64,000 nt of DNA, taken from positions 419,263 to 483,262 of the IMG/VR virus record IMGVR_UViG_3300027996_002186, one strand, 5' to 3'. A program made the position numbers and the translations under genes. The notes beneath the pieces were generated by a model. It worked only from the letters and a program-made list of their open reading frames with translations. It was not told where the DNA came from and searched no databases. Below, piece by piece: positions 6,979-55,425 of the stretch; position 1 is the stretch's first letter, and every line of letters begins with the position of its first letter.

Positions 6979-7410
6979 TTATTTATAAACCTTAAATGGA
7001 AGACTTTTAGATTTATAACCTTTAAAATCCTCTCTAAACTCTTCAAGTCTAGGTTCTATCTCGTCAGATTTTATTATCCAAAATTGAGCACCAGCTGCTA
7101 TTGCTTTCGCTTTTTCGGATTCCTCGTTGGATGAGGATATTATTCCGACAACCACCTCATTTCCGTATTCAAAATTTATCTTTCTAATCAATTCTATACC
7201 ATCGAAAGAACTACCTAATATATTTAAATCTATAAAGGCACAACTAGGTTTTCCTTTACCACTCTCAAACCATTCTTTAAACATATTACTAGCATCATCT
7301 GAACTAGACACACTTGTAAGGCTTAATGTTATATCTAAAAGACTGCAAGCGTCTTCGAAGACTAGGTGGAATAAGTCTTCATCATCTACTAATAATATTG
7401 AATCAATCAT
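6979..7410 (-). CDS. Single-domain response regulator (receiver only)
   Basis: LLVDDED, phosphoacceptor FIDLN, DGIELI, ISSS, IIKS. Confidence 0.9.
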   Translation of the reverse strand: MIDSILLVDDEDLFHLVFEDACSLLDITLSLTSVSSSDDASNMFKEWFESGKGKPSCAFIDLNILGSSFDGIELIRKINFEYGNEVVVGIISSSNEESEKAKAIAAGAQFWIIKSDEIEPRLEEFREDFKGYKSKSLPFKVYK

Positions 7411-8663
7411 AATGGTATTTCTATTTTTATTTTAGTTCCTATTTTTATTTTTTCACTACTAACACCAAAACCATGTTCTTTCATTATCGCTAAACATATG
7501 TTTAACCCTAATCCCGTTCCAGACTCTTGTTGTTTATTTTTTCTTATATATGGTTTAGATAAGTCTTCAAATTCCTTTTGCGACATCCCTCTTCCATTGT
7601 CTTCTATTATTAGTAAATTTCTATACGAACCTCTATCTTTATTGTATTTCGCTTCATCCATATATATCTTAACTAACTTTGAATCACTGTCATTATATTT
7701 TAACCCATTTCTTATTAGGTTATCTACAGCAGTACAAAATAAAGATTCATTAACGTTACATTCTATTAAATTTTCTATAATAACTTGTTTTGAGTATGCG
7801 GTAGTACTTAGGTGTGATTTTAATATATCCTTTAAATTAAAAATTTCTCTTTCTAATGTAGCATCTTTTTTAACAAGATTTGTAAATTCTTTAACACCAG
7901 TATATACTTTTTGTGAGTGTTTTAACCCTTCCTCTATTAACTTTAAAGAGGATTCTAGTTTTAATTTTTTAATAATTTCGGGAGACATCTTTCTTTTTAA
8001 AGAACGTAAACCTCTTGGCATATAGGTGTTTATCCCACTATGCATATCGTGTCTTAATATTTTTGCAGCATGTTCTAGGTAGGAGTTGGTTTTTTCTATC
8101 TCAGCTTTTTGTTCTACCATTTCTGTTATATTGTTTACTACTTTTAGTATCTTATAACATTTACCATTACCATCTAGAATAGGGTTGTAATTACCATTGA
8201 TGTGAACCTCATCACCTTCACTATCTATTCTCACAAATTCACCACTTTTAAATTCACCATCTCTTAAATCTTTCCAAAACTTTTTATATTTAAGTGTGTT
8301 TTTATATTCATGTTTAACGAACATACTATGATGTTTACCTTTAACCTCTTCTATTGTATAACCAAATATGTCTAGGAAATTTTGGTTTGCTTTAATTACG
8401 TGTCCATCAGGACAAAATTCTATTACAGAATTAGATTTGTTAATAGCGTCTAACATGTTGGAATTGAAATTGGAGTTATTACCTATATTTTCTTTTAGTA
8501 TAATACAAAAAGGTGGTAAAAATAATAACAAACTAATAAACTCATACCAATCTGTATATACCGAAGAATTAATAAATCCAGATAACAACATAACTTTAAC
8601 TACAAAAAAAGTAATTATAATAAGGAAAGATGTGTAAATTGATATGTGGAAACTTTTGTTCAT
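7407..8663 (-). CDS. Membrane PAS-domain sensor histidine kinase
   Basis: Two N-terminal hydrophobic segments; PAS (ANQNFLDIFGY...GKHHSMF...FW..L..GEF); H-box LRHDM; N-box NLIRNGLKY; DNGRG; GTGLGL. Confidence 0.92.
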   Translation of the reverse strand: MNKSFHISIYTSFLIIITFFVVKVMLLSGFINSSVYTDWYEFISLLLFLPPFCIILKENIGNNSNFNSNMLDAINKSNSVIEFCPDGHVIKANQNFLDIFGYTIEEVKGKHHSMFVKHEYKNTLKYKKFWKDLRDGEFKSGEFVRIDSEGDEVHINGNYNPILDGNGKCYKILKVVNNITEMVEQKAEIEKTNSYLEHAAKILRHDMHSGINTYMPRGLRSLKRKMSPEIIKKLKLESSLKLIEEGLKHSQKVYTGVKEFTNLVKKDATLEREIFNLKDILKSHLSTTAYSKQVIIENLIECNVNESLFCTAVDNLIRNGLKYNDSDSKLVKIYMDEAKYNKDRGSYRNLLIIEDNGRGMSQKEFEDLSKPYIRKNKQQESGTGLGLNICLAIMKEHGFGVSSEKIKIGTKIKIEIPL

Positions 8664-21957: not shown

Positions 21958-24900
21958 ATGCCTTTACCCTTCGGATCCGGAACCATACCCGGAACTTATT
22001 ATGAAATTGAATTCTCACTACCTGGGCTACCTAGTATAATATCTGAAGGTGAAGACACACTTTTGTTGATACCCAATTCAGATTATATTGCTGAGTTTAT
22101 TGGTGGTAATATTGGTATATCCGATAGTATGCAGAAAGCTACTATGTTTAAGAATTTAAACTCACCAATAGCATCATCAGATGAAATGGTCTTTCGAAGT
22201 TTTGCTAAAACCAACAAAATTGACATTAGCGAAGATATAAATTTATATAAAAAACCAAATGGTAAATTAACTTTCCCTGAGAGTGAAATAAAACTTAGTA
22301 CTGAGAATGATTTAGTCGGTATTAAAGGATTAGAAGTAACTGTATTAAAATCAATATTTGAAACACAGAAACCTTATTTAGAAATAGCTGAGATGGTTAT
22401 TGGTACTCTAGCTAAGTTAGAAGATATAACAGCAAGGATTATGCCACTACTTGGTATTCCTTTAGTTGCAACTTCTAAGAAACCAAAGGGTAATCCAAAT
22501 GCTATTGGATATAAAAGCGGTGCTGCAGTAAAGGAAGAATTAGCCAAAATGAAAGCTATACAAAAAAAAGGAGGTAGTATTAAAGTTGGTAATGATGGTA
22601 CGGTTAGTAAACTAGATGATACAACTGGAGGAGATGCTGGTGCTAGTGGTGCTAGTGCTAGTGGTGCTGGGGATGATGGTAATAATGGGGATGATGGTAA
22701 TAATGGGGGTGATGCAAATTGGGAAATAATATCAACTGTTTATTCAACTGGTCAATTTGATCCAAAAGTTGATTATAAATATGAATATGTTTATTTACCT
22801 AAGGATCCTGGTCTAGGTACGGATGTATCTGATTTAGATTTAGATGAAAAAGATCCTTATCACAAACATAAACCCGAGTCGATAATATTTGGAATATTTA
22901 ATTCCAAAGGAATACCAATCAACCCAGCAAGTCCGTTAAAGGGTATTGATAATGCCGGAAACGAATCAGACTCAGGTTTTCAAATAGCTAGTTGGTTACT
23001 TAATTCACCTAAGTGGGCATTTGGTGAAGGACTTTTTAATTGGCCAGGATTTGGTGATCCTATTTATGTGAGATATCCCAATAACCTAGATGGTAGTCAG
23101 GGAGCAGTTAAGTATTATAATAATGGTAATATAAACATATTGAATGGTGAAAAAGCGATACCTGGTACACCAAAAATAAAGGGGTTTCAGGCAAATGAAG
23201 TCTCTGAGTATAGTGATTTTTTCAATGACCTAATAGGTATAAAACTTTTGGATAATGAGGATTTAACACAAGCGGAAAGAAATAATATTGGGCTTGAGGT
23301 AGCAAGTAAATTGAATATACCAGCACACTTAGAAAATGTTTTCCTTTGGGGTCAGGCAAAATCATCTGTTTATAATAAAATACCCATACCATCAGAAGCT
23401 TTCTTATCTACTGGTAGTTTAGATGGTTTATCAGCTGGGATAGATGATCCTTATCCAAGTGCGATGAAGAAATCATTCAAACCATACAAGATATATTCTG
23501 AGAGTGCAAAGAATGATGAAAAATTAAAAGCTTATGCTAAATCTAAAGGTAAACCTGAGAGTGATGCTGCTTGGGTATGGATTGATCCAGAATCGGATTA
23601 TGTTACTAAGATAATAAGAATCGATCCAACAACTAAGATAACATATAAATATGCTGAGGGTGAACCAGAAATAGAAACTGTGATAAAATCATTTGTTAAG
23701 AATGTTACTACCTTTCAAGTATCAGATAATAGAGAATTTAATATTGAGATTACTAGGTCTCCTGGGTTTGTAGGAACGTCAACCACTGATCAAGCACCGT
23801 TTGTTGAGTATGATAATGTAGAAAACGTAACAAGTTATGAGTTAGAAAACTGGAATTATACAGACAATGATGAACTATTAAGTAGTTTTGGTACTCTTAA
23901 TTTGGCACCAACAAATGTTCCAAATGCTCGATTCGAGGTGACGATGTGGGGTGACACACCACCACCTTATTATAGTGATGGTCAAGACTACTATATGTAT
24001 GGTGAAATTATTGGAGATGATTTATTTATTTATGAAGTCCAGAAAATTGGAGGAGACTGGAAATCACAGGTATTAAGGTTTGATACTATTATCACTTCTG
24101 TGGATTATGATTTATCTCAATTAACCGAGACCGAACTCACTGAATTTTATAGTGATTATAAATCCAATAACACTGCATTCATTTCTAAACCGAGTGATAG
24201 TGATTCCGATATATACATAAACATTTATGGACGTGACATTTTTGATTATCCAGATGATGTAACAGAAGATGGAAAAATAAGATTACTACCTAATGTAGAT
24301 AATTCACTAGTTGAAATTGAAAATAATACCATTATAAAATGGTATTATATGGATCCTTCGGATTATGGTAATGGTGATATATCCAATACCGATCTTCCAA
24401 ATAATGGAATTAAAAAAACAATATCCGTTGATATTAGCACGGTAGGTAATGGTACATCAGTTCCAACTAGTTCGGATAGCAATGTTACTTTAGACGAATT
24501 CCAAATAAGAGTTATTGATGAGGATTCGGATGGTCGTATAATTGATCCATCCAAAGTTCTTAATTCACAATTAACAATAGCCGATCCATTTTCTTTAGGT
24601 AAATATGGACATGGTTCACCGGCCGCAGATGGAGGCACACCACAAAATATTGATTTTATCAAAAGGTTTATGTTAACTGAGTTAGACACCGAATCATATT
24701 ATATCATCGAGGGTGTATTAGCGGATCTGGTTGATGACAATGGTATTTTTGGAGGTGATGCAACTGCTGGTTCTGATGGATCTGCTGCTGGTTCTGGTGC
24801 TGAAGACGGTGGTGGAACTTATAAATTACCTGATGCTATTGGAGCAATAAAGGTTTTTATAAGCATATTAGCTGATATTTTTGGTAAGTTAATACCCCTC

Positions 24901-26634
24901 ATTACAAAAGTTATTGCTTTATTTACAGATCCACCTGGATTTGTGACTAGTATAATATCGGATAAAATGAAAGATGCGTTTATTTTTGTATCTGAGGATT
25001 CTATAAAAGCTTTTATAAAAGGTCAAAATTTTAAAAAAAGTATACCAAGTGGAGATGTAAGCGTACCGGATGCACCAAACGCTCCGGATGCACAAAACAC
25101 TCCAGATGCACCAAACGTAGATGAAAAAGAAAAGAAAAGAAAAGTTCAAGAATTAACAGACCTATTTAAGAATTCATCTCTATCAAATTATGTATTTGTT
25201 AGAGAGGATGGTGAGTTTGGTAGTGTAATAGATGGTATAGCTGGTATCCCCTTTGGTATATTCGGTACTTCATTACCTTTTGGATTAGAAATGGATCTTA
25301 GTAAGATACCTGGTTCACCAATAAACTTAATTTACCCATCAAAGATTAATTTTGATAAAGTTAAAAACTTACAATCATTTGTTAGTCCACAAAAATTTGA
25401 TGATACGAATGCTTCTAATTTAGCTAGTCAAATAAAAGAAGCTAATAAACCGCCTGATAAAATTGATGATTTAAATCTAAATACAAGTGGAGATAAAACT
25501 GATGGTAAAAACGATAACAAAACAAAAATAGAATTTGCTGATGGATCAACAATATTTATCGATGATGGATCAGTTAATGATTATGTTATAGATAACAGTA
25601 GTAAATATAATTTTGTTTATATTTCTGAGAATGCAAAAAAACAATTTGATGAAGTTGACGCTTTGGTAGAAACTGGTACACCAGAAAACTTAAAGAAGGC
25701 TCTTAGTATTTTAGATGATATCGATGAAATACCTGGAAATGATAAAGAAGTTGATTTAAAAAAGAAATCAATAAAGGATAAACTGGATAAGATAGATGGT
25801 GGTGAACAACCTTTATTGAAATTTATATTAGGGTTAGTAACATTACCAATTAAAATAATAGGTGGAATAATAGAATGGATAATGGAATTCTTTAAGAAAC
25901 TGAGTAATCCTCTTAATTTACCAACACTAATTGCTGAATTTTTATCATTCTCTTGGATAATGGATTTCTTCACACCAGTCGGTCTATTAGATATGATTGG
26001 TATAACAATAAACCCTGCTAAAGTAGCAGAGTGGGCCTCTTCAATTAAGTCAAAAAAACAATCGGCAGAAGGATCGGTAGATCCATCGGTAGATCCATCG
26101 GTAGATCCATCAGAAGAGGAAGCGGCGGAAGCTTCTAAAAAGGCAGCAGCACTAGAGGAACCTTTTGCAGATTTGACTGAATTTTTAGATATTGATTTTT
26201 TTGTTAAGTTACCAACTTTAACCACAGAACAATTCTCAGCTATCAAACCAGATTTACCATTAAATTTAATGAAAGGATTGTTTTGTTTTATAGAGAAGAT
26301 GATAAATGGTATAATAGATCTTATTTGGTCATCATTGGGTATCGAGGCTATTATACCACCACCACATATAAAACTATGTTCTAATTCAGATAATATGAGC
26401 CCAGAAGAGATATCAGCGATATTAAATGGACAAGGTGTGGTCACGGATGACAAGGCTGATCTTGATGGTGATGGGGTATTAAGTGAAGATGAAAATAATG
26501 CTGCCAACGCAATTTCTAATTTCTATTACGAAATTGAATTACCTAATGGCGAGAAGAAACAATTCTTAGATAGAGTAGAGTTGGATTCTTTCATATCGGA
26601 GAATAAAGACTTGAATTACGACTTCACTTTTTAA
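21958..26634 (+). CDS. Large acidic putative structural protein
   Basis: 1558 aa with Gly/Asp-rich linkers and amphipathic helical segments; AAATATATA upstream. Confidence 0.65.
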   Translation: MPLPFGSGTIPGTYYEIEFSLPGLPSIISEGEDTLLLIPNSDYIAEFIGGNIGISDSMQKATMFKNLNSPIASSDEMVFRSFAKTNKIDISEDINLYKKPNGKLTFPESEIKLSTENDLVGIKGLEVTVLKSIFETQKPYLEIAEMVIGTLAKLEDITARIMPLLGIPLVATSKKPKGNPNAIGYKSGAAVKEELAKMKAIQKKGGSIKVGNDGTVSKLDDTTGGDAGASGASASGAGDDGNNGDDGNNGGDANWEIISTVYSTGQFDPKVDYKYEYVYLPKDPGLGTDVSDLDLDEKDPYHKHKPESIIFGIFNSKGIPINPASPLKGIDNAGNESDSGFQIASWLLNSPKWAFGEGLFNWPGFGDPIYVRYPNNLDGSQGAVKYYNNGNINILNGEKAIPGTPKIKGFQANEVSEYSDFFNDLIGIKLLDNEDLTQAERNNIGLEVASKLNIPAHLENVFLWGQAKSSVYNKIPIPSEAFLSTGSLDGLSAGIDDPYPSAMKKSFKPYKIYSESAKNDEKLKAYAKSKGKPESDAAWVWIDPESDYVTKIIRIDPTTKITYKYAEGEPEIETVIKSFVKNVTTFQVSDNREFNIEITRSPGFVGTSTTDQAPFVEYDNVENVTSYELENWNYTDNDELLSSFGTLNLAPTNVPNARFEVTMWGDTPPPYYSDGQDYYMYGEIIGDDLFIYEVQKIGGDWKSQVLRFDTIITSVDYDLSQLTETELTEFYSDYKSNNTAFISKPSDSDSDIYINIYGRDIFDYPDDVTEDGKIRLLPNVDNSLVEIENNTIIKWYYMDPSDYGNGDISNTDLPNNGIKKTISVDISTVGNGTSVPTSSDSNVTLDEFQIRVIDEDSDGRIIDPSKVLNSQLTIADPFSLGKYGHGSPAADGGTPQNIDFIKRFMLTELDTESYYIIEGVLADLVDDNGIFGGDATAGSDGSAAGSGAEDGGGTYKLPDAIGAIKVFISILADIFGKLIPLITKVIALFTDPPGFVTSIISDKMKDAFIFVSEDSIKAFIKGQNFKKSIPSGDVSVPDAPNAPDAQNTPDAPNVDEKEKKRKVQELTDLFKNSSLSNYVFVREDGEFGSVIDGIAGIPFGIFGTSLPFGLEMDLSKIPGSPINLIYPSKINFDKVKNLQSFVSPQKFDDTNASNLASQIKEANKPPDKIDDLNLNTSGDKTDGKNDNKTKIEFADGSTIFIDDGSVNDYVIDNSSKYNFVYISENAKKQFDEVDALVETGTPENLKKALSILDDIDEIPGNDKEVDLKKKSIKDKLDKIDGGEQPLLKFILGLVTLPIKIIGGIIEWIMEFFKKLSNPLNLPTLIAEFLSFSWIMDFFTPVGLLDMIGITINPAKVAEWASSIKSKKQSAEGSVDPSVDPSVDPSEEEAAEASKKAAALEEPFADLTEFLDIDFFVKLPTLTTEQFSAIKPDLPLNLMKGLFCFIEKMINGIIDLIWSSLGIEAIIPPPHIKLCSNSDNMSPEEISAILNGQGVVTDDKADLDGDGVLSEDENNAANAISNFYYEIELPNGEKKQFLDRVELDSFISENKDLNYDFTF
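26073..26111 (+). repeat. 12-bp tandem repeat x3 (SVDP)
   Basis: ATCGGTAGATCC three times in tandem. Confidence 0.9.
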
Positions 26635-48570: not shown

Positions 48571-50601
48571 ATGAAAATGTATAAATACCCAGAATTTAAA
48601 TACCCAAACTTAGAAACATATATATCAGAACTTGAGAGTATATTAAATAAGTCAGAATTAGTAATAAATGAATTGTTAAAAATTGATAATAAAACATATG
48701 ATACTTTCCTAAAGCCATATTTCATGGCTTATGAAGATATAAACAATCATTACTTTTATCTATCACACATAAATTCAGTTAAGAATACTGATGATACACA
48801 ACGTGTTGAAACTGAGAGCTTACCAATTATGAGTGATTGGTACACAAAGATAGGTCAACGAGATGACATTCATCAAGCATTATTGGAGGTTTCGAAAACA
48901 AATCTTAACCCAAGTCAGCGCATAGTAATCGAACAATCATTGCTTAGTAACAAACTAAAGGGTATTGGTCAAGAAGATTCAATTAAGAAAAGGCTTGGTG
49001 AAATTAGCAAAGAGTTATCTGAGTTATCTGATTCATTTTCTACAAACCTACTAAAAGCTACAAAGGATTTCAAACTAGAAGTAAAAAATCCAGAAGATGT
49101 TAGTGAGTTCCCTGATGATGAATTACAAAGACATGTAAAAGAGGATACTGATCATTGGGAATTTACCTTACAAGCACCATCATACTCAGCTTACTTAAAG
49201 TATGGATCTAACACAGATATAAGAGAGAAATTATCCAAAGCATTATCAACAAGAGCTACTGAAAATGAAGAACTTATTGAAAAAATATTAACTCTTAAAA
49301 ACGAAAAGGCTAAAATATTAGGATATAAAAATTACGCTGAGATATCGATATTAACAAAAATGGCTGATAGTCCAAATGAAATAGTTGGGTTTTTGGATAG
49401 GTTAGCAACAATCGCCTTACCTATTAAGTCAAAAGAAGATGATGAATTATTATCATTCACTGAAAGAAAGTATGGCGTAACACATTTAAACTCTTGGGAT
49501 AAAGGTTATTACACAAATAAATATAAGGAAAGTGTTTATGATTTTAAGTCAGAAGATTTGAAACCATATTTTGAACAATCAATGGTGTTAAATGGTTTAT
49601 TTGACTTTCTGTATGAAAAATTCAAGCTTAAATTTACTAAAGTAGATACTTATGTTTGGGATGAAAAGGTTACTGTGTATGATATAACACGTAATGGTGA
49701 AGAACATTCAAGAGTTTATATCGATCTAGAATCTAGAGATGATAAAAGATCCGGTGCTTGGATGAATAATTCAGAAGTTGGTTATGTAAAGGAAAATGGT
49801 GAAAAGGTTTTACCAATTGCTTATATAACTTGCAATTTCACACCATCAACTGATAAGTTACCATCATTACTTTCACACTATGAAGTAGAAACACTATTTC
49901 ATGAGATGGGACATGTATTACAACACGTCTGTTCAGAAGTGGAAGATTTCACATACGCTGGTATAGGTGGTATCGAGTGGGATGCTGTTGAGTGGAGTTC
50001 TCAATTTTTAGAACTATTTGTTTATGAAGGAGATGTATTAAGGAAATTTGGTAAACACCATGAAACTGGTGAAATAATACCGGATGAGTTCATTAAAAAG
50101 ATTAACGATTTAAGAACATACAGAGCAGCTAATGGAATCATAGGACAAGTGAAGAATGGTAAATTCGATATGACAATTTTCCAATCAGATGATACGTCAA
50201 AGGAATATGTACAATCAACACTTGATAAGATAATAGAAGATTTTGGATTGGAATCTTTTGATGGTAATAAATGGCAATGTGGGTTTAGTCATATTTTTGC
50301 TGGTGGATACTCAGCAGGGTATTACTCTTATAAATGGTCAGAAGTTCTTTCAGTTGATACTTTCTTAAAATTTAGAGAAAATGATGATAGTGATAAGTAT
50401 TATGAAGAATTTTTGAGTAAGGGCTCATCTCTGCCAAGTATGGATATGTTTGTTAATTATATGGGTAGAAAGCCTAGTGAAGAATCATTAGTAAACTACC
50501 TAATCGGATTACAACCTGTTTCGTCAGGTCGAGAGTTTGAATCCCTTCAAGCGAAGTTTGATTCAAAAAGAATTAATAATGAACTTAGAGGGTTGGGGTA
50601 A
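48571..50601 (+). CDS. prlC: M3A metallopeptidase, oligopeptidase A (OpdA/PrlC)-like
   Basis: KRSGAWM, TLFHEMGH, WDAVE.SSQFLE, FSHIFAGGYSAGYYSYKWSEV. Confidence 0.93.
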   Translation: MKMYKYPEFKYPNLETYISELESILNKSELVINELLKIDNKTYDTFLKPYFMAYEDINNHYFYLSHINSVKNTDDTQRVETESLPIMSDWYTKIGQRDDIHQALLEVSKTNLNPSQRIVIEQSLLSNKLKGIGQEDSIKKRLGEISKELSELSDSFSTNLLKATKDFKLEVKNPEDVSEFPDDELQRHVKEDTDHWEFTLQAPSYSAYLKYGSNTDIREKLSKALSTRATENEELIEKILTLKNEKAKILGYKNYAEISILTKMADSPNEIVGFLDRLATIALPIKSKEDDELLSFTERKYGVTHLNSWDKGYYTNKYKESVYDFKSEDLKPYFEQSMVLNGLFDFLYEKFKLKFTKVDTYVWDEKVTVYDITRNGEEHSRVYIDLESRDDKRSGAWMNNSEVGYVKENGEKVLPIAYITCNFTPSTDKLPSLLSHYEVETLFHEMGHVLQHVCSEVEDFTYAGIGGIEWDAVEWSSQFLELFVYEGDVLRKFGKHHETGEIIPDEFIKKINDLRTYRAANGIIGQVKNGKFDMTIFQSDDTSKEYVQSTLDKIIEDFGLESFDGNKWQCGFSHIFAGGYSAGYYSYKWSEVLSVDTFLKFRENDDSDKYYEEFLSKGSSLPSMDMFVNYMGRKPSEESLVNYLIGLQPVSSGREFESLQAKFDSKRINNELRGLG

Positions 50602-50643: not shown

Positions 50644-51396
50644 ATGATAACAGATAAATACGTATTTTTTTGGGGTGGAATCTGCAGCCAATGGGCCGCA
50701 TCTGAATTTGAAATTGATGGACAAAAATATACTTGTGCAGAACAGTATATGATGTATAAGAAAGCTTCTTTATTTGAAGATGAAGATGTAGAAAATGCTA
50801 TAATGAGAACCAATAACCCCAGAGAGCAAAAAGCTTTAGGAAGAAAAGTTAGAGGTTTTGACAAAGATAAGTGGGAAGAAGTTTGTAAAGAATATGTTTA
50901 TGAAGCTAACTATGCTAAGTTCACACAAAACTCATTCATGCTTGAAGAGTTAAAAACTTATGGTGATAGAGAAATTGTAGAAGCATCACCAGAAGACTCT
51001 ATTTGGGGGATTGGAATGCATGAGACTGACCCTGATATCCTTGACAAGACCAAGTGGAGGGGAACAAACTGGCTTGGAGAAGCAATAATGCGAGTTAGAG
51101 ATGAATTATTAACTGAAAATGTAAAGACTTTAAATTTAATATACAGACATACAGGCGATGGTAAGTTCGTTGCTGAAATGGAAGACGGTTCTTTTAAGGA
51201 CTTGGGCCCTAATGCTGTCGGGATGATTAGGTATACTTATTTTGAAGAAGATACACTACCATCAAATGGATGGGAAGTTACAAGAGGTAAGCTATTAGAA
51301 GATTACCAACCAAAGATGTTAAAAGATTATCAGGATGGTAAGTTTGAAGTTTCTCACATAGATGAACATGGGATGAAACACTTTAAAGAAAAATGA
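50644..51396 (+). CDS. NADAR (YbiA-like) protein with C-terminal extension
   Basis: SQW, AEQYMM..KA..F.D, KALGRKV, KFTQN, VEASP.D.IWGIG, W.G.N.LG...M.VR. Confidence 0.9.
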   Translation: MITDKYVFFWGGICSQWAASEFEIDGQKYTCAEQYMMYKKASLFEDEDVENAIMRTNNPREQKALGRKVRGFDKDKWEEVCKEYVYEANYAKFTQNSFMLEELKTYGDREIVEASPEDSIWGIGMHETDPDILDKTKWRGTNWLGEAIMRVRDELLTENVKTLNLIYRHTGDGKFVAEMEDGSFKDLGPNAVGMIRYTYFEEDTLPSNGWEVTRGKLLEDYQPKMLKDYQDGKFEVSHIDEHGMKHFKEK

Positions 51397-52224: not shown

Positions 52225-52824
52225 ATGAAAAATAATATAGATTCTAAACAAAATAATAGTGATGAAAAAGAGTTGGTTAAAAAATATTTAAATGGAGACA
52301 CAAGAGCTTTTACAACATTGTTCAAAACATATAAACCTATTTTCTTCACTAACGCGATAAAATGGTACGGTAACAACAACTACAATAACGAAGAGATTGA
52401 GGATATGGCTATGGAATTCTTAGGTAGGATATCATCAAAATTACATTTATATGATCCAGAAAAAAGTATTTTTGGTACTTGGATTACCAATTCGATGAAG
52501 AATTTTATGATAGAGTGTCACCGGAAAAGAACTCGACAAAAAAGAATACCAAGTAATAAAAAGATTTCTTTTGACGAAATCATAACAGAACCTTCAATTA
52601 ATGAGACATATAAAAATATAGAGATTAAAACCTATCGAAAATTAATTAAAATGATGGTAGAGTCTTTAGGTAGTGATGATACACGAATATTTAACGAAAT
52701 ATTTCTAAAAGGTAGAACAAAATCAGAAGTAGCTAAAGAAATGGGTATAATATATAGCACTTTAGAGTATAGAATTAAGAGAGTAAAAAGAAGATTAGAG
52801 AAATTTAGACCAGAAGATATGTAG
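52225..52824 (+). CDS. ECF-type sigma-70 family factor
   Basis: GD..AF..LF..Y, EIEDMA.E, F.TWI....N...E..R, C-terminal HTH (SEVAKEMGI..ST...RI.R). Confidence 0.85.
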   Translation: MKNNIDSKQNNSDEKELVKKYLNGDTRAFTTLFKTYKPIFFTNAIKWYGNNNYNNEEIEDMAMEFLGRISSKLHLYDPEKSIFGTWITNSMKNFMIECHRKRTRQKRIPSNKKISFDEIITEPSINETYKNIEIKTYRKLIKMMVESLGSDDTRIFNEIFLKGRTKSEVAKEMGIIYSTLEYRIKRVKRRLEKFRPEDM

Positions 52825-52925: not shown

Positions 52926-54251
52926 ATGAGATATTTTTTAACATTGGTAATATTATTATTTTCATTAACAAATGTCAATTCACAAGTAGCTAATGATGAT
53001 TGTCTTAACGCAATACCATTAGGTAATCTACCAAACCCATCTAATTGTGGTCCAGGACCTATGAATAATGGACAAGGTTCTCCAATCACATTTAATAATC
53101 TTACAAATGTAAACTCATTAACAGAGGCTCCATATACTACACTAATAAATTGCCAAGGAACTCCAGGAAATAATATGTCTTCTCCAGCTACCGATGTTTG
53201 GTATTCATTCGTTGCAACAGGAAATTCATTAGATGTTACAATTAATGGAAATATAAACCAACCGAATGTAGGTATATGGACAGGAAATTGTGGAGCATTA
53301 ATAGGGGTCGGTTGTGATATTGGTGGAGGAGGAAACTTAAATACTACATCTCAATTAACACCCGGACAAACATATTACATTCAAATCAGTGGAGGAAACC
53401 CTGCAGATCAAGGAACATTCGATTTAACACTACAAAATAATAATAGTTGTGATGATTGTTTATTATCATCTAATATGACCGTCACTCCATTACCAATAAA
53501 TGGAACCTATCAACCAGGAACTACTGTAACATTTTGTTTTACAGTAACAGAATGGTCACAAGAAAATCAAAATTGGTTTCATGGTGTTGTTCCTATAATG
53601 GCATCTGGTTGGGGTCCTATCACACCAATAAGTGGAGCAAATACTTGTGACACTGGTCCAGGGGTTTGGACTTGGTTTAATGGTATCAACACACCAAACG
53701 GAAATTCAAATGGGTTTTTCTTTGATGGTGATTTGTTTAACAATCCAAATGGAAATCCTACAAACAATTTCGGAGATAATTGTAATGGTAATGTCAATTG
53801 GGAATTTTGTTGGGAAGCAACAACAACTAGTTGTCCACCTGGTCAAGATGGAGATAACCTAAGTGTTTTTATAGAAACTTACGCTGATGGTGAAACTGGT
53901 AGCTGGACGAATATAGCTTGTCAAAATGATCCTATATTTGCATTCAGTGGTAGTCTTACGTGCTGTCCGATACCAACTGAAATACACACAGATGAAATAT
54001 GTTTAGGTGAAAATGATGGAACAATAACAGTAACAGGACAAGGTAGTGCACCATTCGATTATGTTTGGGAAGACTCTAATGGAAATATAATACAAACATC
54101 AAATAATATAAATGGTTCGGATAATATGTTAAATCTTGCACCAGATATATATACTATCACCGTCACAGATAATGATGGATGTGTACAAACAATAACAATA
54201 ACTATATTAGCAGGAGGCCAAGCCAGTATAGTGGGTATATGGCATAATTAA
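52926..54251 (+). CDS. Secreted Cys/Asn/Gly-rich adhesin-like protein with a SprB-like repeat
   Basis: Signal peptide ending NS|Q; NDDC..A, DVWYSF.A; C...NDG.I....G..PF.Y.W...Y..TVTD..GC; ends IVGIWHN. Confidence 0.8.
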   Translation: MRYFLTLVILLFSLTNVNSQVANDDCLNAIPLGNLPNPSNCGPGPMNNGQGSPITFNNLTNVNSLTEAPYTTLINCQGTPGNNMSSPATDVWYSFVATGNSLDVTINGNINQPNVGIWTGNCGALIGVGCDIGGGGNLNTTSQLTPGQTYYIQISGGNPADQGTFDLTLQNNNSCDDCLLSSNMTVTPLPINGTYQPGTTVTFCFTVTEWSQENQNWFHGVVPIMASGWGPITPISGANTCDTGPGVWTWFNGINTPNGNSNGFFFDGDLFNNPNGNPTNNFGDNCNGNVNWEFCWEATTTSCPPGQDGDNLSVFIETYADGETGSWTNIACQNDPIFAFSGSLTCCPIPTEIHTDEICLGENDGTITVTGQGSAPFDYVWEDSNGNIIQTSNNINGSDNMLNLAPDIYTITVTDNDGCVQTITITILAGGQASIVGIWHN

Positions 54252-54274
54252 AAATAAAAAAAAACAATGAAAAA

Positions 54275-54832
54275 ATGAAAAAACTATTATTAATTTTAGG
54301 AATTATAGCACTATTTGTGAGTAATTCTTATTCGCAAATAACAACCAACCCTGACACTGTATGTGTTGGTGCAGTTGGTGAAAACTATTGGGTGACCAAT
54401 ACACCAGGATCAACCTATGATTGGACATTGAATGGTGGGGGTGGTTCAATTACATCTGGACAAGGAACTGACGCAATCACAGTTGATTGGGGTAATGTTC
54501 CAGGGTTATACCCAACAGCGGTAACTGTGGTAGAAACAAACGCTGCAGGATGTACTGATACGGTTGATTTGGATATCTTTATTTTACTACCAGCATTTAT
54601 ACAAATAGGACCTTTCTGTGAGGGTGACCCTTGTGTAACATTGACAGGAACTCCAGCTGGAGGTGCTTGGAGTGGAACAGGTGTTACATTAACGGCAGGT
54701 GTTTACGAATTTTGTCCTGTAACGTCAGGTAATGGTGTATTTAACTTAACTTACACAGTTGGTGGGTGTTCAATCGTGATGGTCGTAACTGTAAATGCTG
54801 CACCCGTATTGGGACCAATTATACATAATTAA
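54275..54832 (+). CDS. Secreted PKD/Ig-like protein
   Basis: Signal peptide ending SYS|Q; YDW...GG.I.SGQGT..ITV.W; ends LGPIIHN. Confidence 0.8.
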   Translation: MKKLLLILGIIALFVSNSYSQITTNPDTVCVGAVGENYWVTNTPGSTYDWTLNGGGGSITSGQGTDAITVDWGNVPGLYPTAVTVVETNAAGCTDTVDLDIFILLPAFIQIGPFCEGDPCVTLTGTPAGGAWSGTGVTLTAGVYEFCPVTSGNGVFNLTYTVGGCSIVMVVTVNAAPVLGPIIHN

Positions 54833-55425
54833 TGAAATATTTACTATCCATATTACTTTTAATACCTCTTTGGTTGTCTGCGCAAAATGTGCAGACAATT
54901 AAAGTGTGTACCGAAGACCAGTCATATATACAAGATTATTGGGTGGATAACCCCACGACAAGTAGTGTATATGAGTGGGTTGTGGAGGGTGGATCTATTG
55001 TTAATGGGCAAGGTACTGATTTTATTACAGTAAATTGGTTAAATATACCTTATGATATATACCAAATATCAGTTTCGGTTATTAGTAACATGTGTATTGG
55101 TGATACTTCATATTTATTAGTAGATATTGATGAATGTTCTTTTGATGGTGTTTACGTACCTAATTGCTTTACTATTAATGGTGATGGTATGAATGATACA
55201 TGGGGACCAGTATTTAATGGTGAGTGGGATGATTCACAATATATTATGTACATTTTTAATCGATGGGGTGAAATGATATGGGAATCACATAATCCACTAG
55301 AAACTTGGAATGGGTATTATCAAAATAAGTTATGTCAAAACGGAGTTTATGTTTGGAAGATGTACTACAAACCACTTAATAGTTATCAATTACAAACTCA
55401 CGGACACGTCACGCTATTAAAGTAA
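54832..55425 (+). CDS. Secreted PKD-like protein with T9SS type-B (gliding-motility-associated) C-terminal domain
   Basis: Signal peptide ending LSA|Q; YVPNCFTINGDGMND.W...IFNRWGE...WNG.Y...GVY.W...GHVTLLK. Confidence 0.9.
   Translation: MKYLLSILLLIPLWLSAQNVQTIKVCTEDQSYIQDYWVDNPTTSSVYEWVVEGGSIVNGQGTDFITVNWLNIPYDIYQISVSVISNMCIGDTSYLLVDIDECSFDGVYVPNCFTINGDGMNDTWGPVFNGEWDDSQYIMYIFNRWGEMIWESHNPLETWNGYYQNKLCQNGVYVWKMYYKPLNSYQLQTHGHVTLLK

What the first reader, a model, noticed from the sequence alone, without database searches (positions are those of the whole stretch)
52926..55425. Three-gene secreted operon: two subunits end in IxHN and only the third has a T9SS signal
Seen: all three ORFs have their own signal peptide cleaved before Gln, so this is not one broken gene. 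ORF1 ends IVGIWHN, ORF2 ends LGPIIHN; ORF2 and ORF3 start with the same PKD-like domain (VC...Y.V....S.Y.W...GG.I..GQGT..ITV.W); ORF3 ends in a type-B T9SS CTD. Known: type-B CTDs export SprB-like adhesins with PorP/SprF partners. Inference: a tip-shaft-anchor surface filament in which each IxHN tail docks into the next subunit's PKD domain, so ORF2 could polymerise and ORFs 1-2 piggyback on ORF3. A phage-encoded T9SS appendage could mask receptors or alter host adhesion.
Basis: partly seen in the sequence, partly recalled or inferred. Interest (0 to 1): 0.75.

Follow-up and report, generated by a model that had tools for sequence, protein, structure and literature searches.

The report
Three-piece phage-encoded T9SS surface adhesin
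A large marine phage carries a three-gene cassette for a secreted adhesin split into head, adaptor and anchor; only the anchor has the type IX secretion domain, and the other two end in a strictly conserved four-residue tail that most likely plugs each piece into the next, an assembly principle not yet described for this secretion system.

Summary
ORF1 (52926-54251), ORF2 (54275-54832) and ORF3 (54832-55425) each have a Sec signal peptide cleaved before Gln. ORF1 and ORF2 end in IWHN and IIHN. ORF3 is one PKD-like domain plus a type-B T9SS CTD. The window lies in a 312.7-kb virus record.

The same cassette occurs in more than 70 distinct viral loci and in Flavobacteriales and Bacteroidales-like chromosomes. 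It has a variable head A, a PKD_6 adaptor B and a PKD_6+CHU_C anchor C. The tail Ile and His are kept in 188/188 and 187/188 unique B proteins, and in 67/67 unique A proteins, always with one residue after His. No A or B has a CTD; every C does.

Single-chain A-B-C homologues exist (about 600 aa, more than 2,000 relatives). In these the A-tail motif sits directly before the B PKD domain, and the B-tail equivalent sits before the C PKD domain. AlphaFold models show the tail disordered in split ORF2. In the fused protein the equivalent segment is structured and counted within the next Ig domain.

Best reading: a split T9SS adhesin held together by C-terminal donor strands, with the CTD supplied in trans. 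ORF2 polymerisation and the phage's benefit remain untested.

The parts
52926..54251 (+). ORF1 = subunit A (head), 441 aa. Signal peptide aa 1-19, mature protein starts at Gln20.
   Evidence: Full-length homologues at 76-81% identity in L003/L004, and a 425-aa homologue in L066.
52983..53450 (+). ORF1 N-terminal domain (aa 20-175). Present only in the long A forms. The same ~170-aa domain precedes the core in many large type-B CTD adhesins.
   Evidence: Alignment A3. In one search many hits carry the core at about residues 160-360 of the protein.
53451..53960 (+). ORF1 conserved head core domain (aa ~176-345), with no Pfam family. Shared by all short A proteins and by 895 representative clusters.
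   Evidence: The fused-protein model shows a beta-sandwich with weak likeness to Gram-positive pilin and adhesin domains (Z about 9).
53961..54224 (+). ORF1 Ig-like domain with a SprB repeat (aa ~346-433).
   Evidence: Pfam SprB repeat at 352-385, 27.6 bits against a cut-off of 28. L040 has the same repeat at 36.4 bits.
54225..54248 (+). ORF1 C-terminal tail (aa 434-441, ends IWHN): proposed donor strand for the ORF2 PKD_6 domain.
   Evidence: I and H are invariant in 67/67 unique A proteins whatever domain precedes the tail. The motif I-T-H-N is kept at the A|B junction of 114 fused homologues.
54275..54832 (+). ORF2 = subunit B (adaptor), 185 aa. Signal peptide aa 1-20, PKD_6 Ig domain aa ~21-104, second Ig domain aa ~105-175, tail aa 176-185.
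   Evidence: AF2 model with pLDDT 88 shows two sandwiches.
54800..54829 (+). ORF2 C-terminal tail (ends GPIIHN): proposed donor strand for the ORF3 PKD-like domain.
   Evidence: P, I and H are invariant. The tail is coil with pLDDT about 49 in the monomer model. The equivalent GPEIVHD in fused P0216 is a strand with pLDDT about 90 and falls within the next Ig domain.
54832..55425 (+). ORF3 = subunit C (anchor), 197 aa. Signal peptide aa 1-17, PKD_6-like domain aa 18-~103. The start codon overlaps the ORF2 stop.
55156..55419 (+). ORF3 type-B T9SS C-terminal domain (aa 109-196).
   Evidence: PF13585 at 5.4e-14 and TIGR04131 at 2.6e-11, both above their cut-offs. It is the only CHU_C domain in the phage genome. 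The homologous CTD in the fused model matches T9SS substrate CTDs 8glk_D and 8glj_D, rmsd 1.9 A.

Best explanation
The locus is a phage-borne, miniaturised copy of a three-subunit ('split') type-B T9SS surface adhesin found in Flavobacteriales.

Proposed mechanism. All three proteins enter the periplasm through Sec and lose their signal peptides before Gln. ORF3 (C) is a minimal anchor made of one PKD-like Ig domain and a type-B CTD. A host PorP/SprF-type carrier must recognise this CTD for export through the T9SS translocon and attachment to the cell surface. ORF1 (A, a variable binding head) and ORF2 (B, a two-Ig adaptor) have no CTD. Each ends in a free tail, ...[G/S/T][P]-I-x-H-[N/Y/F/W/D]-COOH. 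This tail acts as a donor beta-strand that completes or extends the N-terminal edge of the PKD-like domain of the next subunit: A tail into B, B tail into C. The result is a 1:1:1 A-B-C stalk whose CTD is supplied in trans. Because A and B cannot cross the outer membrane alone, assembly would happen in the periplasm and the complex would leave as one folded cargo.

The phage presumably expresses the cassette in the infected cell to change what the cell surface binds.

Shown: gene structure, signal peptides, domains, tail conservation, synteny, the absence of a CTD in A and B, cellular and fused homologues, and colinearity. Inferred: strand docking (from fusions and predicted models), co-export, carrier use, and the benefit to the phage.
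For: (1) The A-B-C cassette is conserved in 71 loci with distinct B proteins. A lies upstream or downstream of B-C, and some loci have two A genes. No other gene family accompanies it in more than 12 of 61 viral loci.
(2) The tail is kept although the A heads are unrelated (SprB repeat, ALK/LTK Gly-rich, GEVED, PKD; 153-615 aa, and up to more than 1,600 aa in cells).
(3) The motif is specific to the C-terminus. In the bacterial loci there were 18 terminal cases, and in a second set internal matches were at chance level (7 seen, 6.8 expected).
(4) None of 67 A and none of 71 B proteins has a type-B CTD anywhere, while 61 of 61 C proteins do. Of the 150 best proteins sharing the A core, 80 end in a type-B CTD and 20 end in the tail, and those 20 have no CTD.
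(5) Rosetta-stone fusions: P0216, P0269, P0137 and P0140 are single-chain A-B-C proteins. The P0216 family has 2,485 relatives at E<=1e-10. In 114 full-length members the A|B junction reads I(110)-T-H(95)-N(91) followed at once by the PKD_6 start ..PDTTC. The B|C junction reads P-x-I-x-[Y/F] followed by the C domain. ORF2 aligns end to end, tail included, with P0216 residues 265-431.
(6) Models: the ORF2 tail is coil with pLDDT below 50. In fused P0216 the junction residues are short strands with pLDDT 70-93. The solved Ig domain 2yhg_A matches ORF2 20-104 from chain residue 840, but matches the fused protein 257-351 from chain residue 823. Single PKD/FN3 domains align to the fused model from residue 419-425, a range that includes the B-tail equivalent.
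(7) Cellular versions in L095 and L102 are followed by a PorP/SprF gene (E 3e-36), as known type-B systems are (PMC12618676).
(8) The ORF2 stop overlaps the ORF3 start.
Against: There is no direct evidence of binding, and the only complex-prediction job returned no verdict. The docking geometry rests on aligned ranges of predicted models of a homologue that is only 28-34% identical; contacts could not be inspected. His is replaced by Tyr or Phe at the fused B|C junction and is lost in P0137, so the exact role of His is unknown. Export of a non-covalent multi-protein cargo through the T9SS has not been described in the literature I could search. The phage encodes no PorP/SprF carrier, so secretion depends on an unidentified host carrier.
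Confidence: 0.58

Rival explanations
1. The IxH[NYFWD] tail is a short sorting or recognition signal of its own. A T9SS component, a PorP/SprF-type carrier or another envelope factor would read it, not the neighbouring subunit. A, B and C would then be three separately handled cargoes that merely act together.
For: The tail is invariant whatever domain precedes it. It ends exactly one residue after His, which suggests recognition of a free carboxylate. No binding between the subunits has been demonstrated.
Against: Known T9SS signals are folded domains of 70-100 aa (PMC10994853, PMC12618676). Fused homologues place the same motif at internal domain junctions, where it cannot be a free C-terminal signal. 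A small PKD+CTD protein C is always co-encoded and is translationally coupled to B.
Confidence: 0.13
2. One reading: the ORF2 tail also inserts into the PKD_6 domain of another ORF2. B would polymerise into a shaft of variable length, capped by A and anchored by C, as in a pilus.
For: The PKD_6 domains of B and C are homologous. Donor-strand polymers are known in Bacteroidota type V pili (PMC13655056).
Against: Every fused homologue has one B unit between A and C. Cellular systems lengthen B by internal Ig repeats (296-527 aa). A tails and B tails have different preferred residues at -3 and -5/-6, and can differ in the last residue within one locus (N with W, Y with N), which points to two specific junctions.
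Confidence: 0.12
3. The three proteins are independent secreted or periplasmic proteins. The tail would be a structural remnant of gene fission (the former inter-domain linker) with no present docking role.
For: Fused and split forms are sister groups, so the tail is historically a domain junction.
Against: A neutral remnant would not keep I and H in 254 of 255 unique A and B proteins that are otherwise only 40-60% identical. It would also not keep termination at exactly +1 after His. Conservation of His is stricter in split forms than at the fused B|C junction.
Confidence: 0.06
4. The locus is one adhesin gene broken by mutations (a pseudogene of a fused form).
For: Fused ~600-aa homologues exist.
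Against: Each ORF has its own start codon and a full signal peptide with a Gln cleavage site. The split layout is conserved in more than 70 divergent loci, including ones where A lies downstream of C.
Confidence: 0.02

Closest known systems
Type-B CTD adhesins of the T9SS with PorP/SprF carriers (SprB/SprF, Fjoh_3952/Fjoh_3951, PG1035/PorP; PMC12618676, PMC10994853)
   Same: ORF3 has a bona fide type-B CTD preceded by Ig/PKD-like domains. Cellular versions of the cassette are followed by a PorP/SprF gene. The A head core and Ig_7/PKD domains are the ones found in single-chain type-B adhesins.
   Different: Known substrates carry cargo and CTD on one polypeptide. Here the cargo (A, B) and the CTD (C) are on separate proteins, each with its own signal peptide, linked by a conserved tail. 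The phage copy is an orphan with no carrier gene.
Type V pili of Bacteroidia (FimA/Mfa1): protease-mediated strand exchange (PMC13655056)
   Same: The phylum is the same. In both, a C-terminal donor strand of one subunit replaces or supplies an N-terminal strand of the acceptor. Both have a tip-stalk-anchor logic.
   Different: Type V pilins are lipoproteins with a transthyretin-like two-domain fold. They are exported by the lipoprotein route, activated by Rgp cleavage, and polymerise. The present proteins are SPI/Q-rule proteins with PKD/Ig folds, are anchored by a T9SS CTD, have no lipobox or FimA/Mfa family match, and probably assemble 1:1:1.
Chaperone-usher pili (donor-strand exchange)
   Same: An incomplete Ig-like fold is completed by a strand from the neighbouring subunit.
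   Different: In chaperone-usher pili the donor is an N-terminal extension and the missing strand is the C-terminal G strand. A chaperone and an usher are needed. No such genes occur near the cassette.
Hitchhiker/piggyback export (Tat PaoABC, hydrogenases; peroxisomal PTS1 piggybacking; PMC4273604, PMC9251779)
   Same: Signal-less subunits ride on a partner that carries the targeting signal through a translocon that accepts folded proteins.
   Different: The translocon is different. I found no report of this for the T9SS.
Phage-encoded T9SS cargo in 'Cryophage' (PMC7468147)
   Same: A phage genome encodes proteins with T9SS CTDs that are variable between phage variants, presumably secreted by the host system.
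   Different: Those are single-chain type-A CTD enzymes and a PA14 protein. No multi-subunit cassette, no type-B CTD and no tail motif were described.
GhpA grappling hooks of Aureispira (PDB 9fls, 9flp)
   Same: It is a Bacteroidota surface appendage made of Ig-like domains. The ORF2 model matches GhpA fragments at 21-23% identity.
   Different: The likeness is at domain level only. GhpA is one very large polypeptide.

Membership tests
T9SS type-B CTD substrate (TIGR04131 / PF13585) | N-terminal Sec signal peptide | tested here: met
   By inspection only, since no SignalP tool was available. All three ORFs and about 65 homologues have an n-region, an h-region and a small-x-small|Gln site. This fits the Q-rule of PMC5837995.
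T9SS type-B CTD substrate (TIGR04131 / PF13585) | C-terminal type-B sorting domain above the curated cut-off | tested here: met
   Met for ORF3: 52.5 bits (cut-off 27) and 43.5 bits (cut-off 35). NOT met for ORF1 or ORF2, nor for any of 67 A and 71 B homologues. Only ORF3 is a member.
T9SS type-B CTD substrate (TIGR04131 / PF13585) | Cognate PorP/SprF-like carrier | tested here: not met
   No PF11751 match in the 312.7-kb phage genome. It is present directly after C in the cellular loci L095 and L102. Orphan type-B substrates that use an unlinked carrier are known (PMC12618676).
T9SS type-B CTD substrate (TIGR04131 / PF13585) | Secretion depends on the T9SS | not testable with these tools
   Needs expression in wild type and in a T9SS mutant.
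PKD_6 (PF19408) PKD-like domain | Profile match above the gathering score of 25 bits | tested here: met
   ORF2 scores 36.4 bits. ORF3 scores 24.8 bits, just under the cut-off, but it is homologous to the ORF2 domain (E 2e-12).
SprB repeat (PF13573) | Profile match above 28 bits | tested here: inconclusive
   ORF1 352-385 scores 27.6 bits. The A protein of L040 scores 36.4 bits.
Type V pilins (FimA/Mfa1) | Lipoprotein signal with lipidated Cys, and a FimA/Mfa-type fold or family match | tested here: not met
   Cleavage exposes Gln and there is no lipobox. There is no FimA/Mfa Pfam match. The models are generic Ig/PKD sandwiches.
Type V pilins (FimA/Mfa1) | C-terminal donor strand inserted into the neighbour's groove | tested here: inconclusive
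   Suggested by fused homologues and by the aligned ranges of predicted models. No complex structure or verdict was obtained.
Chaperone-usher pili | Periplasmic chaperone and outer-membrane usher genes in the operon; N-terminal donor extension | tested here: not met
   No conserved neighbours beyond A, B and C. The conserved element is C-terminal.
Tailed phage genome (context) | Virus record with phage hallmark genes | tested here: met
   IMG/VR virus record with CheckV completeness 91%. It has a tail-fibre-like ORF (phrog_6921, 1.3e-18) and an ORF matching terminase-large-subunit PHROGs, although its best hit is PhoH-like. Pfam Terminase_6N and 6C were not found.

The most novel reading that the evidence does not exclude
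The T9SS can export and anchor non-covalent multi-subunit cargo. A family of Bacteroidota adhesins has been split so that the secretion domain sits on a minimal anchor. Interchangeable heads and adaptors would attach through a four-residue-core C-terminal donor strand (I-x-H-x-COOH) that completes the next subunit's PKD-like domain. Aquatic phages, including jumbo phages, have captured and miniaturised this plug-in system. Because phage and host parts are homologous (48% identity between ORF2 and a cellular B), phage heads or adaptors might even dock onto the host's own anchor, or the phage anchor might capture host heads. That would re-tip or mask a surface structure during infection.
Probability: 0.4. 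Interest if true: 0.85.

Novelty: new variant of a known kind. Interest (0 to 1): 0.72.

Why it matters
If the tails are docking strands, this is the first case of a T9SS secretion domain supplied in trans, meaning hitchhiker export through the type IX translocon. It would also be a new modular way of building Bacteroidota surface adhesins. It would explain hundreds of 'hypothetical' or 'gliding motility-associated-like' proteins in marine and freshwater Flavobacteriales and their phages. It would give a compact, portable tag (a tail plus an ~85-aa PKD domain plus a CTD) for surface display. For phage biology, the cassette is a widespread three-gene moron with a hypervariable head that puts phage-chosen binding domains on the infected cell. 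That makes questions about superinfection exclusion, particle attachment or interference with gliding directly testable.

Tried and rejected
(1) Complex prediction with ORF1 345-441, mature ORF2 and mature ORF3, partner ORF2: NO VERDICT. One control did not separate from the test score, so the job is not used as evidence for or against binding.
Transcription is therefore unverified. Runs X24 and X25 hold only about 6% of sampled words.
(4) Alignments A4 and A5, which mixed split fragments with fused proteins, were misaligned by global MAFFT and were discarded. A6, made of fused homologues only, was used instead.
(5) Profile searches of the PDB by sequence with A1 and A3 found nothing meaningful.
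(6) NCBIfam and PHROGs have no family for ORF1 or ORF2.
(7) The hypothesis that the tail is an ordinary inter-domain linker of PKD arrays is rejected, because internal occurrences are at chance level.
(8) The 'mutual exclusivity' of tail and CTD is partly true by construction, since both are terminal features. The meaningful statement is that tail proteins have no CTD anywhere.
(9) Covariation between tail residues and acceptor-domain columns was considered and not run, because the few tail states follow the main clades and phylogeny would confound the result.
(10) The sigma-70 promoter and terminator scan was uninformative: 28 sites found against 27.6 expected.
(11) blastn against the phage collection found no close relative of this region.
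(12) The upstream ECF-like sigma factor was considered as a module member and rejected, because it is not conserved beside the cassette.
Full report
**What is in the window.**
On the + strand lie three tightly packed ORFs. ORF1 is 52926-54251 (441 aa), ORF2 is 54275-54832 (185 aa) and ORF3 is 54832-55425 (197 aa). The ORF1-ORF2 gap is 23 nt. The ORF2 stop overlaps the ORF3 start (TAATG). Each protein begins with a typical Sec signal peptide whose cleavage exposes Gln (VNS|Q, SYS|Q, LSA|Q). This is the Bacteroidota 'Q-rule' for signal peptidase I substrates (PMC5837995).

ORF1 ends IVGIWHN and ORF2 ends LGPIIHN. ORF2 has a PKD_6 domain (36.4 bits). ORF3 has a PKD_6-like domain (24.8 bits against a cut-off of 25) that is homologous to that of ORF2 (44% over 68 aa, E 2e-12). 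ORF3 then runs straight into a type-B T9SS sorting domain (CHU_C 5.4e-14; TIGR04131 2.6e-11). ORF1 has a near-threshold SprB repeat and otherwise no family match.

**Context.**
The window is part of a 312,709-bp IMG/VR virus record with CheckV completeness 91% and about 29% GC. The genome has a tail-fibre-like ORF and an ORF matching terminase-large-subunit PHROGs, plus many ORFans. Near-identical DNA is present in at least 20 marine, seawater or brine metagenome runs from several studies between 2012 and 2020.

ORF3 holds the only CHU_C domain in the genome, and the genome has no PorP/SprF carrier gene. An ECF-like sigma factor lies just upstream, but it is not conserved next to the cassette elsewhere.

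**Is the tail more than chance?**
Only ORF1 and ORF2, of 465 ORFs in the genome, end in [ILVM]xH[NYF]. The composition-based expectation is 5.7e-4 per ORF. ORF2 has 527 homologues in the large protein collection, and all 120 listed end in PIxH[N/Y/F] with nothing after.

Pooling those with the loci described below gives 188 unique B proteins. Pro(-5) is kept in 187, Ile(-4) in 188 and His(-2) in 187. Among 67 unique A proteins, Ile and His are kept in all 67. The last residue varies (N, Y, F, W, D). The rest of B is only 50-60% identical between clades.

**A conserved three-gene cassette.**
A pattern search with the B alignment found 105 viral stretches. In the 80 loci fetched, almost every one has B immediately followed by a C protein of 176-197 aa (PKD_6-like plus CHU_C). 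Within a few kb there is also an A protein ending in the tail.

A may be upstream or downstream of B-C. Some loci have two A genes (L004/L012, L059). A is modular. Most are ~190 aa, consisting of a signal peptide, a conserved ~165-aa core and the tail. Others carry SprB repeats, an ALK/LTK glycine-rich domain, GEVED or PKD domains, and all end in I-x-H-x. No other gene family travels with the cassette, with at most 12 of 61 loci sharing any neighbour. It therefore behaves as a mobile three-gene moron. Atlas clusters for the A core and for B are labelled mostly viral.

**Cellular counterparts.**
The cassette also occurs in bacterial chromosomes. In several Flavobacteriales MAGs it sits at a conserved place downstream of guaA (L091-L094, L097, L099, L101). 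There A is 505-904 aa, B is 190-437 aa and C is 355-427 aa.

In a sample of 401 genomes of that order, 11 had a B-like match at E<=1e-25. A phylum-wide sample of 400 others had none (not found in those searched). Cellular B proteins are longer because of internal Ig repeats (PKD_6 plus K319L-like PKD plus Ig_7), and they still end ..GPINHW or ..SPIYHY. In two Bacteroidales-like MAG loci (L095, L102) the order is A-B-C-PorP/SprF (PF11751, 3e-36). This is the arrangement known for type-B substrates and their carriers (PMC12618676). The phage version is thus a miniaturised copy of a cellular system. ORF2 is 48% identical to the B protein of L091.

**The tail stands in for a CTD.**
A profile of the A core finds 895 representative clusters among 1.84 billion proteins. 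Many are adhesins of 1,000-3,800 aa with the core at the N-terminus, or after a ~170-aa domain as in ORF1. Of the best 150, 80 end in a type-B CTD, several look like type-A CTD proteins, and 20 end in the tail. None of those 20 has a CTD anywhere.

In the surveyed loci, 0 of 67 A and 0 of 71 B proteins have a type-B CTD, and 61 of 61 C proteins do. Proteins with the architecture of T9SS adhesins therefore lack the secretion domain exactly when they carry the tail and sit beside a minimal PKD+CTD protein.

**Rosetta-stone fusions.**
Four of the A-core hits (P0216, P0269, P0137, P0140) are single polypeptides that align in order with A core, B and C. P0216 heads a large family: 2,485 relatives at E<=1e-10, about 600 aa, named at most 'gliding motility-associated-like protein', on contigs up to 310 kb. 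One of these contigs carries a phage holin.

In 114 full-length members the A|B junction reads ...G-D-I-T-H-N-F-I-P-C-P-D-T-T-C. Ile is kept in 110, His in 95 and Asn in 91. This is an A-type tail followed at once by the start of PKD_6. The B|C junction reads A-P-x-I-x-[Y/F]-S-S-E-L-I-D-L-C.

ORF2 aligns with P0216 residues 265-431 right through its tail (GP-IIHN against GPEIVHD), and the C-like part starts four residues later. The subunit order is therefore A then B then C, and each tail is the segment that precedes the next PKD-like domain. On a tree of the C part, the fused forms make one well-supported clade beside the split forms. P0140 is nested next to L034, the one split locus with degenerate tails.

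**Structure predictions.**
The AF2 model of ORF2 has mean pLDDT 88. It shows two Ig-like sandwiches (strands 27-104 and 131-174). The last ten residues are coil with pLDDT about 49, and the first mature residues are also uncertain.

The model of fused P0216 has mean pLDDT 78, and its Cys-rich repeats at 189-262 are unmodelled. Short strands appear at 270-271 and 274-275 (the ITHN junction, pLDDT 70-87) and at 427-429 (the EIV of GPEIVHD, pLDDT about 90).

Exhaustive structural alignment gives a useful comparison. The same solved Ig domain (2yhg_A) aligns to ORF2 residues 20-104 from chain residue 840, but to the fused protein residues 257-351 from chain residue 823. The tail-equivalent segment therefore occupies about 17 N-terminal residues of the canonical domain that mature ORF2 lacks. 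Single PKD or FN3 domains align to the third Ig domain of the fused model from residue 419-425 (for example 4xed_A 0-96 to 419-508), a range that includes the B-tail equivalent.

The CTD of the fused model superposes on T9SS substrate CTDs seen in translocon complexes (8glk_D, 8glj_D; rmsd 1.9 A). These are aligned ranges on predicted models, not contacts. I treat them as supporting inference.

**Mechanism proposed.**
Shown: three secreted proteins, only C with a type-B CTD, an invariant free tail on A and B, colinear fused homologues, and cellular homologues with a PorP/SprF neighbour.

Inferred:
- The tail is a donor strand that completes the N-terminal edge of the next subunit's PKD-like domain (A to B, B to C).
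- The complex forms in the periplasm and leaves through the T9SS on C's CTD. The translocon carries folded proteins and hands type-B substrates to carriers that anchor them (PMC10994853, PMC12618676).
- The orphan phage CTD uses a host carrier, as orphan type-B substrates of F. johnsoniae do (PMC12618676).

Termination exactly one residue after His suggests that the carboxylate is part of the recognition. The replacement of His by Tyr or Phe at the covalent B|C junction suggests a ring that packs into a pocket. Both points are speculation.

**Comparison with known systems.**
The nearest mechanistic analogue is the type V pilus of Bacteroidia, where a C-terminal donor strand of one pilin replaces the N-terminal anchor strand of the next (PMC13655056). 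Those pilins, however, are lipoproteins with a different fold, need gingipain cleavage and polymerise. Chaperone-usher pili use an N-terminal donor.

Hitchhiker export is known for Tat and for peroxisomes (PMC4273604, PMC9251779). I found no report of it for the T9SS. Phage-encoded T9SS cargo has been noted once, as single-chain type-A CTD proteins (PMC7468147). I found nothing on this tail, and Pfam, NCBIfam and PHROGs have no family for A or for the tail.

Polymerisation of ORF2 is not favoured. There is one B unit in every fusion, B is lengthened by internal repeats in cells, and A and B tails have distinct preferences. It is not excluded.

What the phage gains is unknown. The hypervariable head on a conserved adaptor and anchor is what one expects of a binding protein under diversifying selection. 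Candidate roles are receptor masking (superinfection exclusion), making the infected cell stick to particles or cells, or occupying gliding-track carriers. None was tested.

**Verdict.**
I class the finding as a new variant of a known kind: a T9SS type-B adhesin that is split and has its CTD in trans. It is widespread and unannotated, and it can be tested with simple experiments.

Noticed in passing
window 52225-52824 (+): An ECF-like sigma-70 family factor (TIGR02937 4.6e-17; phrog_1740) lies directly upstream of the cassette. It is not conserved beside the cassette in other loci.
   Followed up: partly
window 48571-50601 and 50644-51396 (+): A peptidase M3 (oligopeptidase A-like, 1.2e-105) and a NADAR-domain protein (1.7e-49) are encoded by the phage just upstream. 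They look like auxiliary genes.
   Followed up: no
window 7407-8663 (-): A PAS plus HATPase_c (histidine-kinase-like) ORF of 418 aa in a phage genome.
   Followed up: no
window 21958-26634 (+): A 1,558-aa ORF with no Pfam match. Several other ORFs of 450-590 aa in the window are also ORFans.
   Followed up: no
L187:1-877 and L187:6001-7797: A 66-kb phage-like contig with a holin carries both a fused A-B-C type-B CTD protein (P0216) and a separate HYR protein with a type-A Por_Secre_tail. Some phages therefore encode cargo for both branches of the T9SS.
   Followed up: no
P0216 residues 189-262; P0269 residues ~200-410: Fused homologues carry 3-8 copies of a ~24-aa Cys-rich repeat (GCTDxxACNYxxxAxCDDGSC) between the head and the PKD_6 domain. 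AF2 models it with pLDDT below 50.
   Followed up: no
L034:4404-5555 and L035: This split locus has aberrant tails (A ends ..SPIFH, B ends ..SPIYKQ). Its C protein groups with the fused protein P0140 on the tree, so it may be an intermediate or a decaying system.
   Followed up: partly
P0131, P0151, P0256 (A-core proteins): These have tail-like C-termini without His (..PPPILSD, ..PPPIISN, ..LPAITYN). The motif family may be broader than I-x-H-x.
   Followed up: no
L094, L097, L099, L101, L091-L093: In Flavobacteriales MAGs the cassette sits at a conserved chromosomal place: guaA, then a ~441-aa secreted protein, then A, B and C. One such contig is labelled Thalassomonas (L094), probably a binning error.
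   Followed up: partly
window 52926-55425: Near-identical DNA occurs in at least 20 marine, seawater or brine metagenome runs from 2012-2020. Two metatranscriptome runs of one study hold about 6% of sampled words, a hint of transcription that could not be checked.
   Followed up: partly
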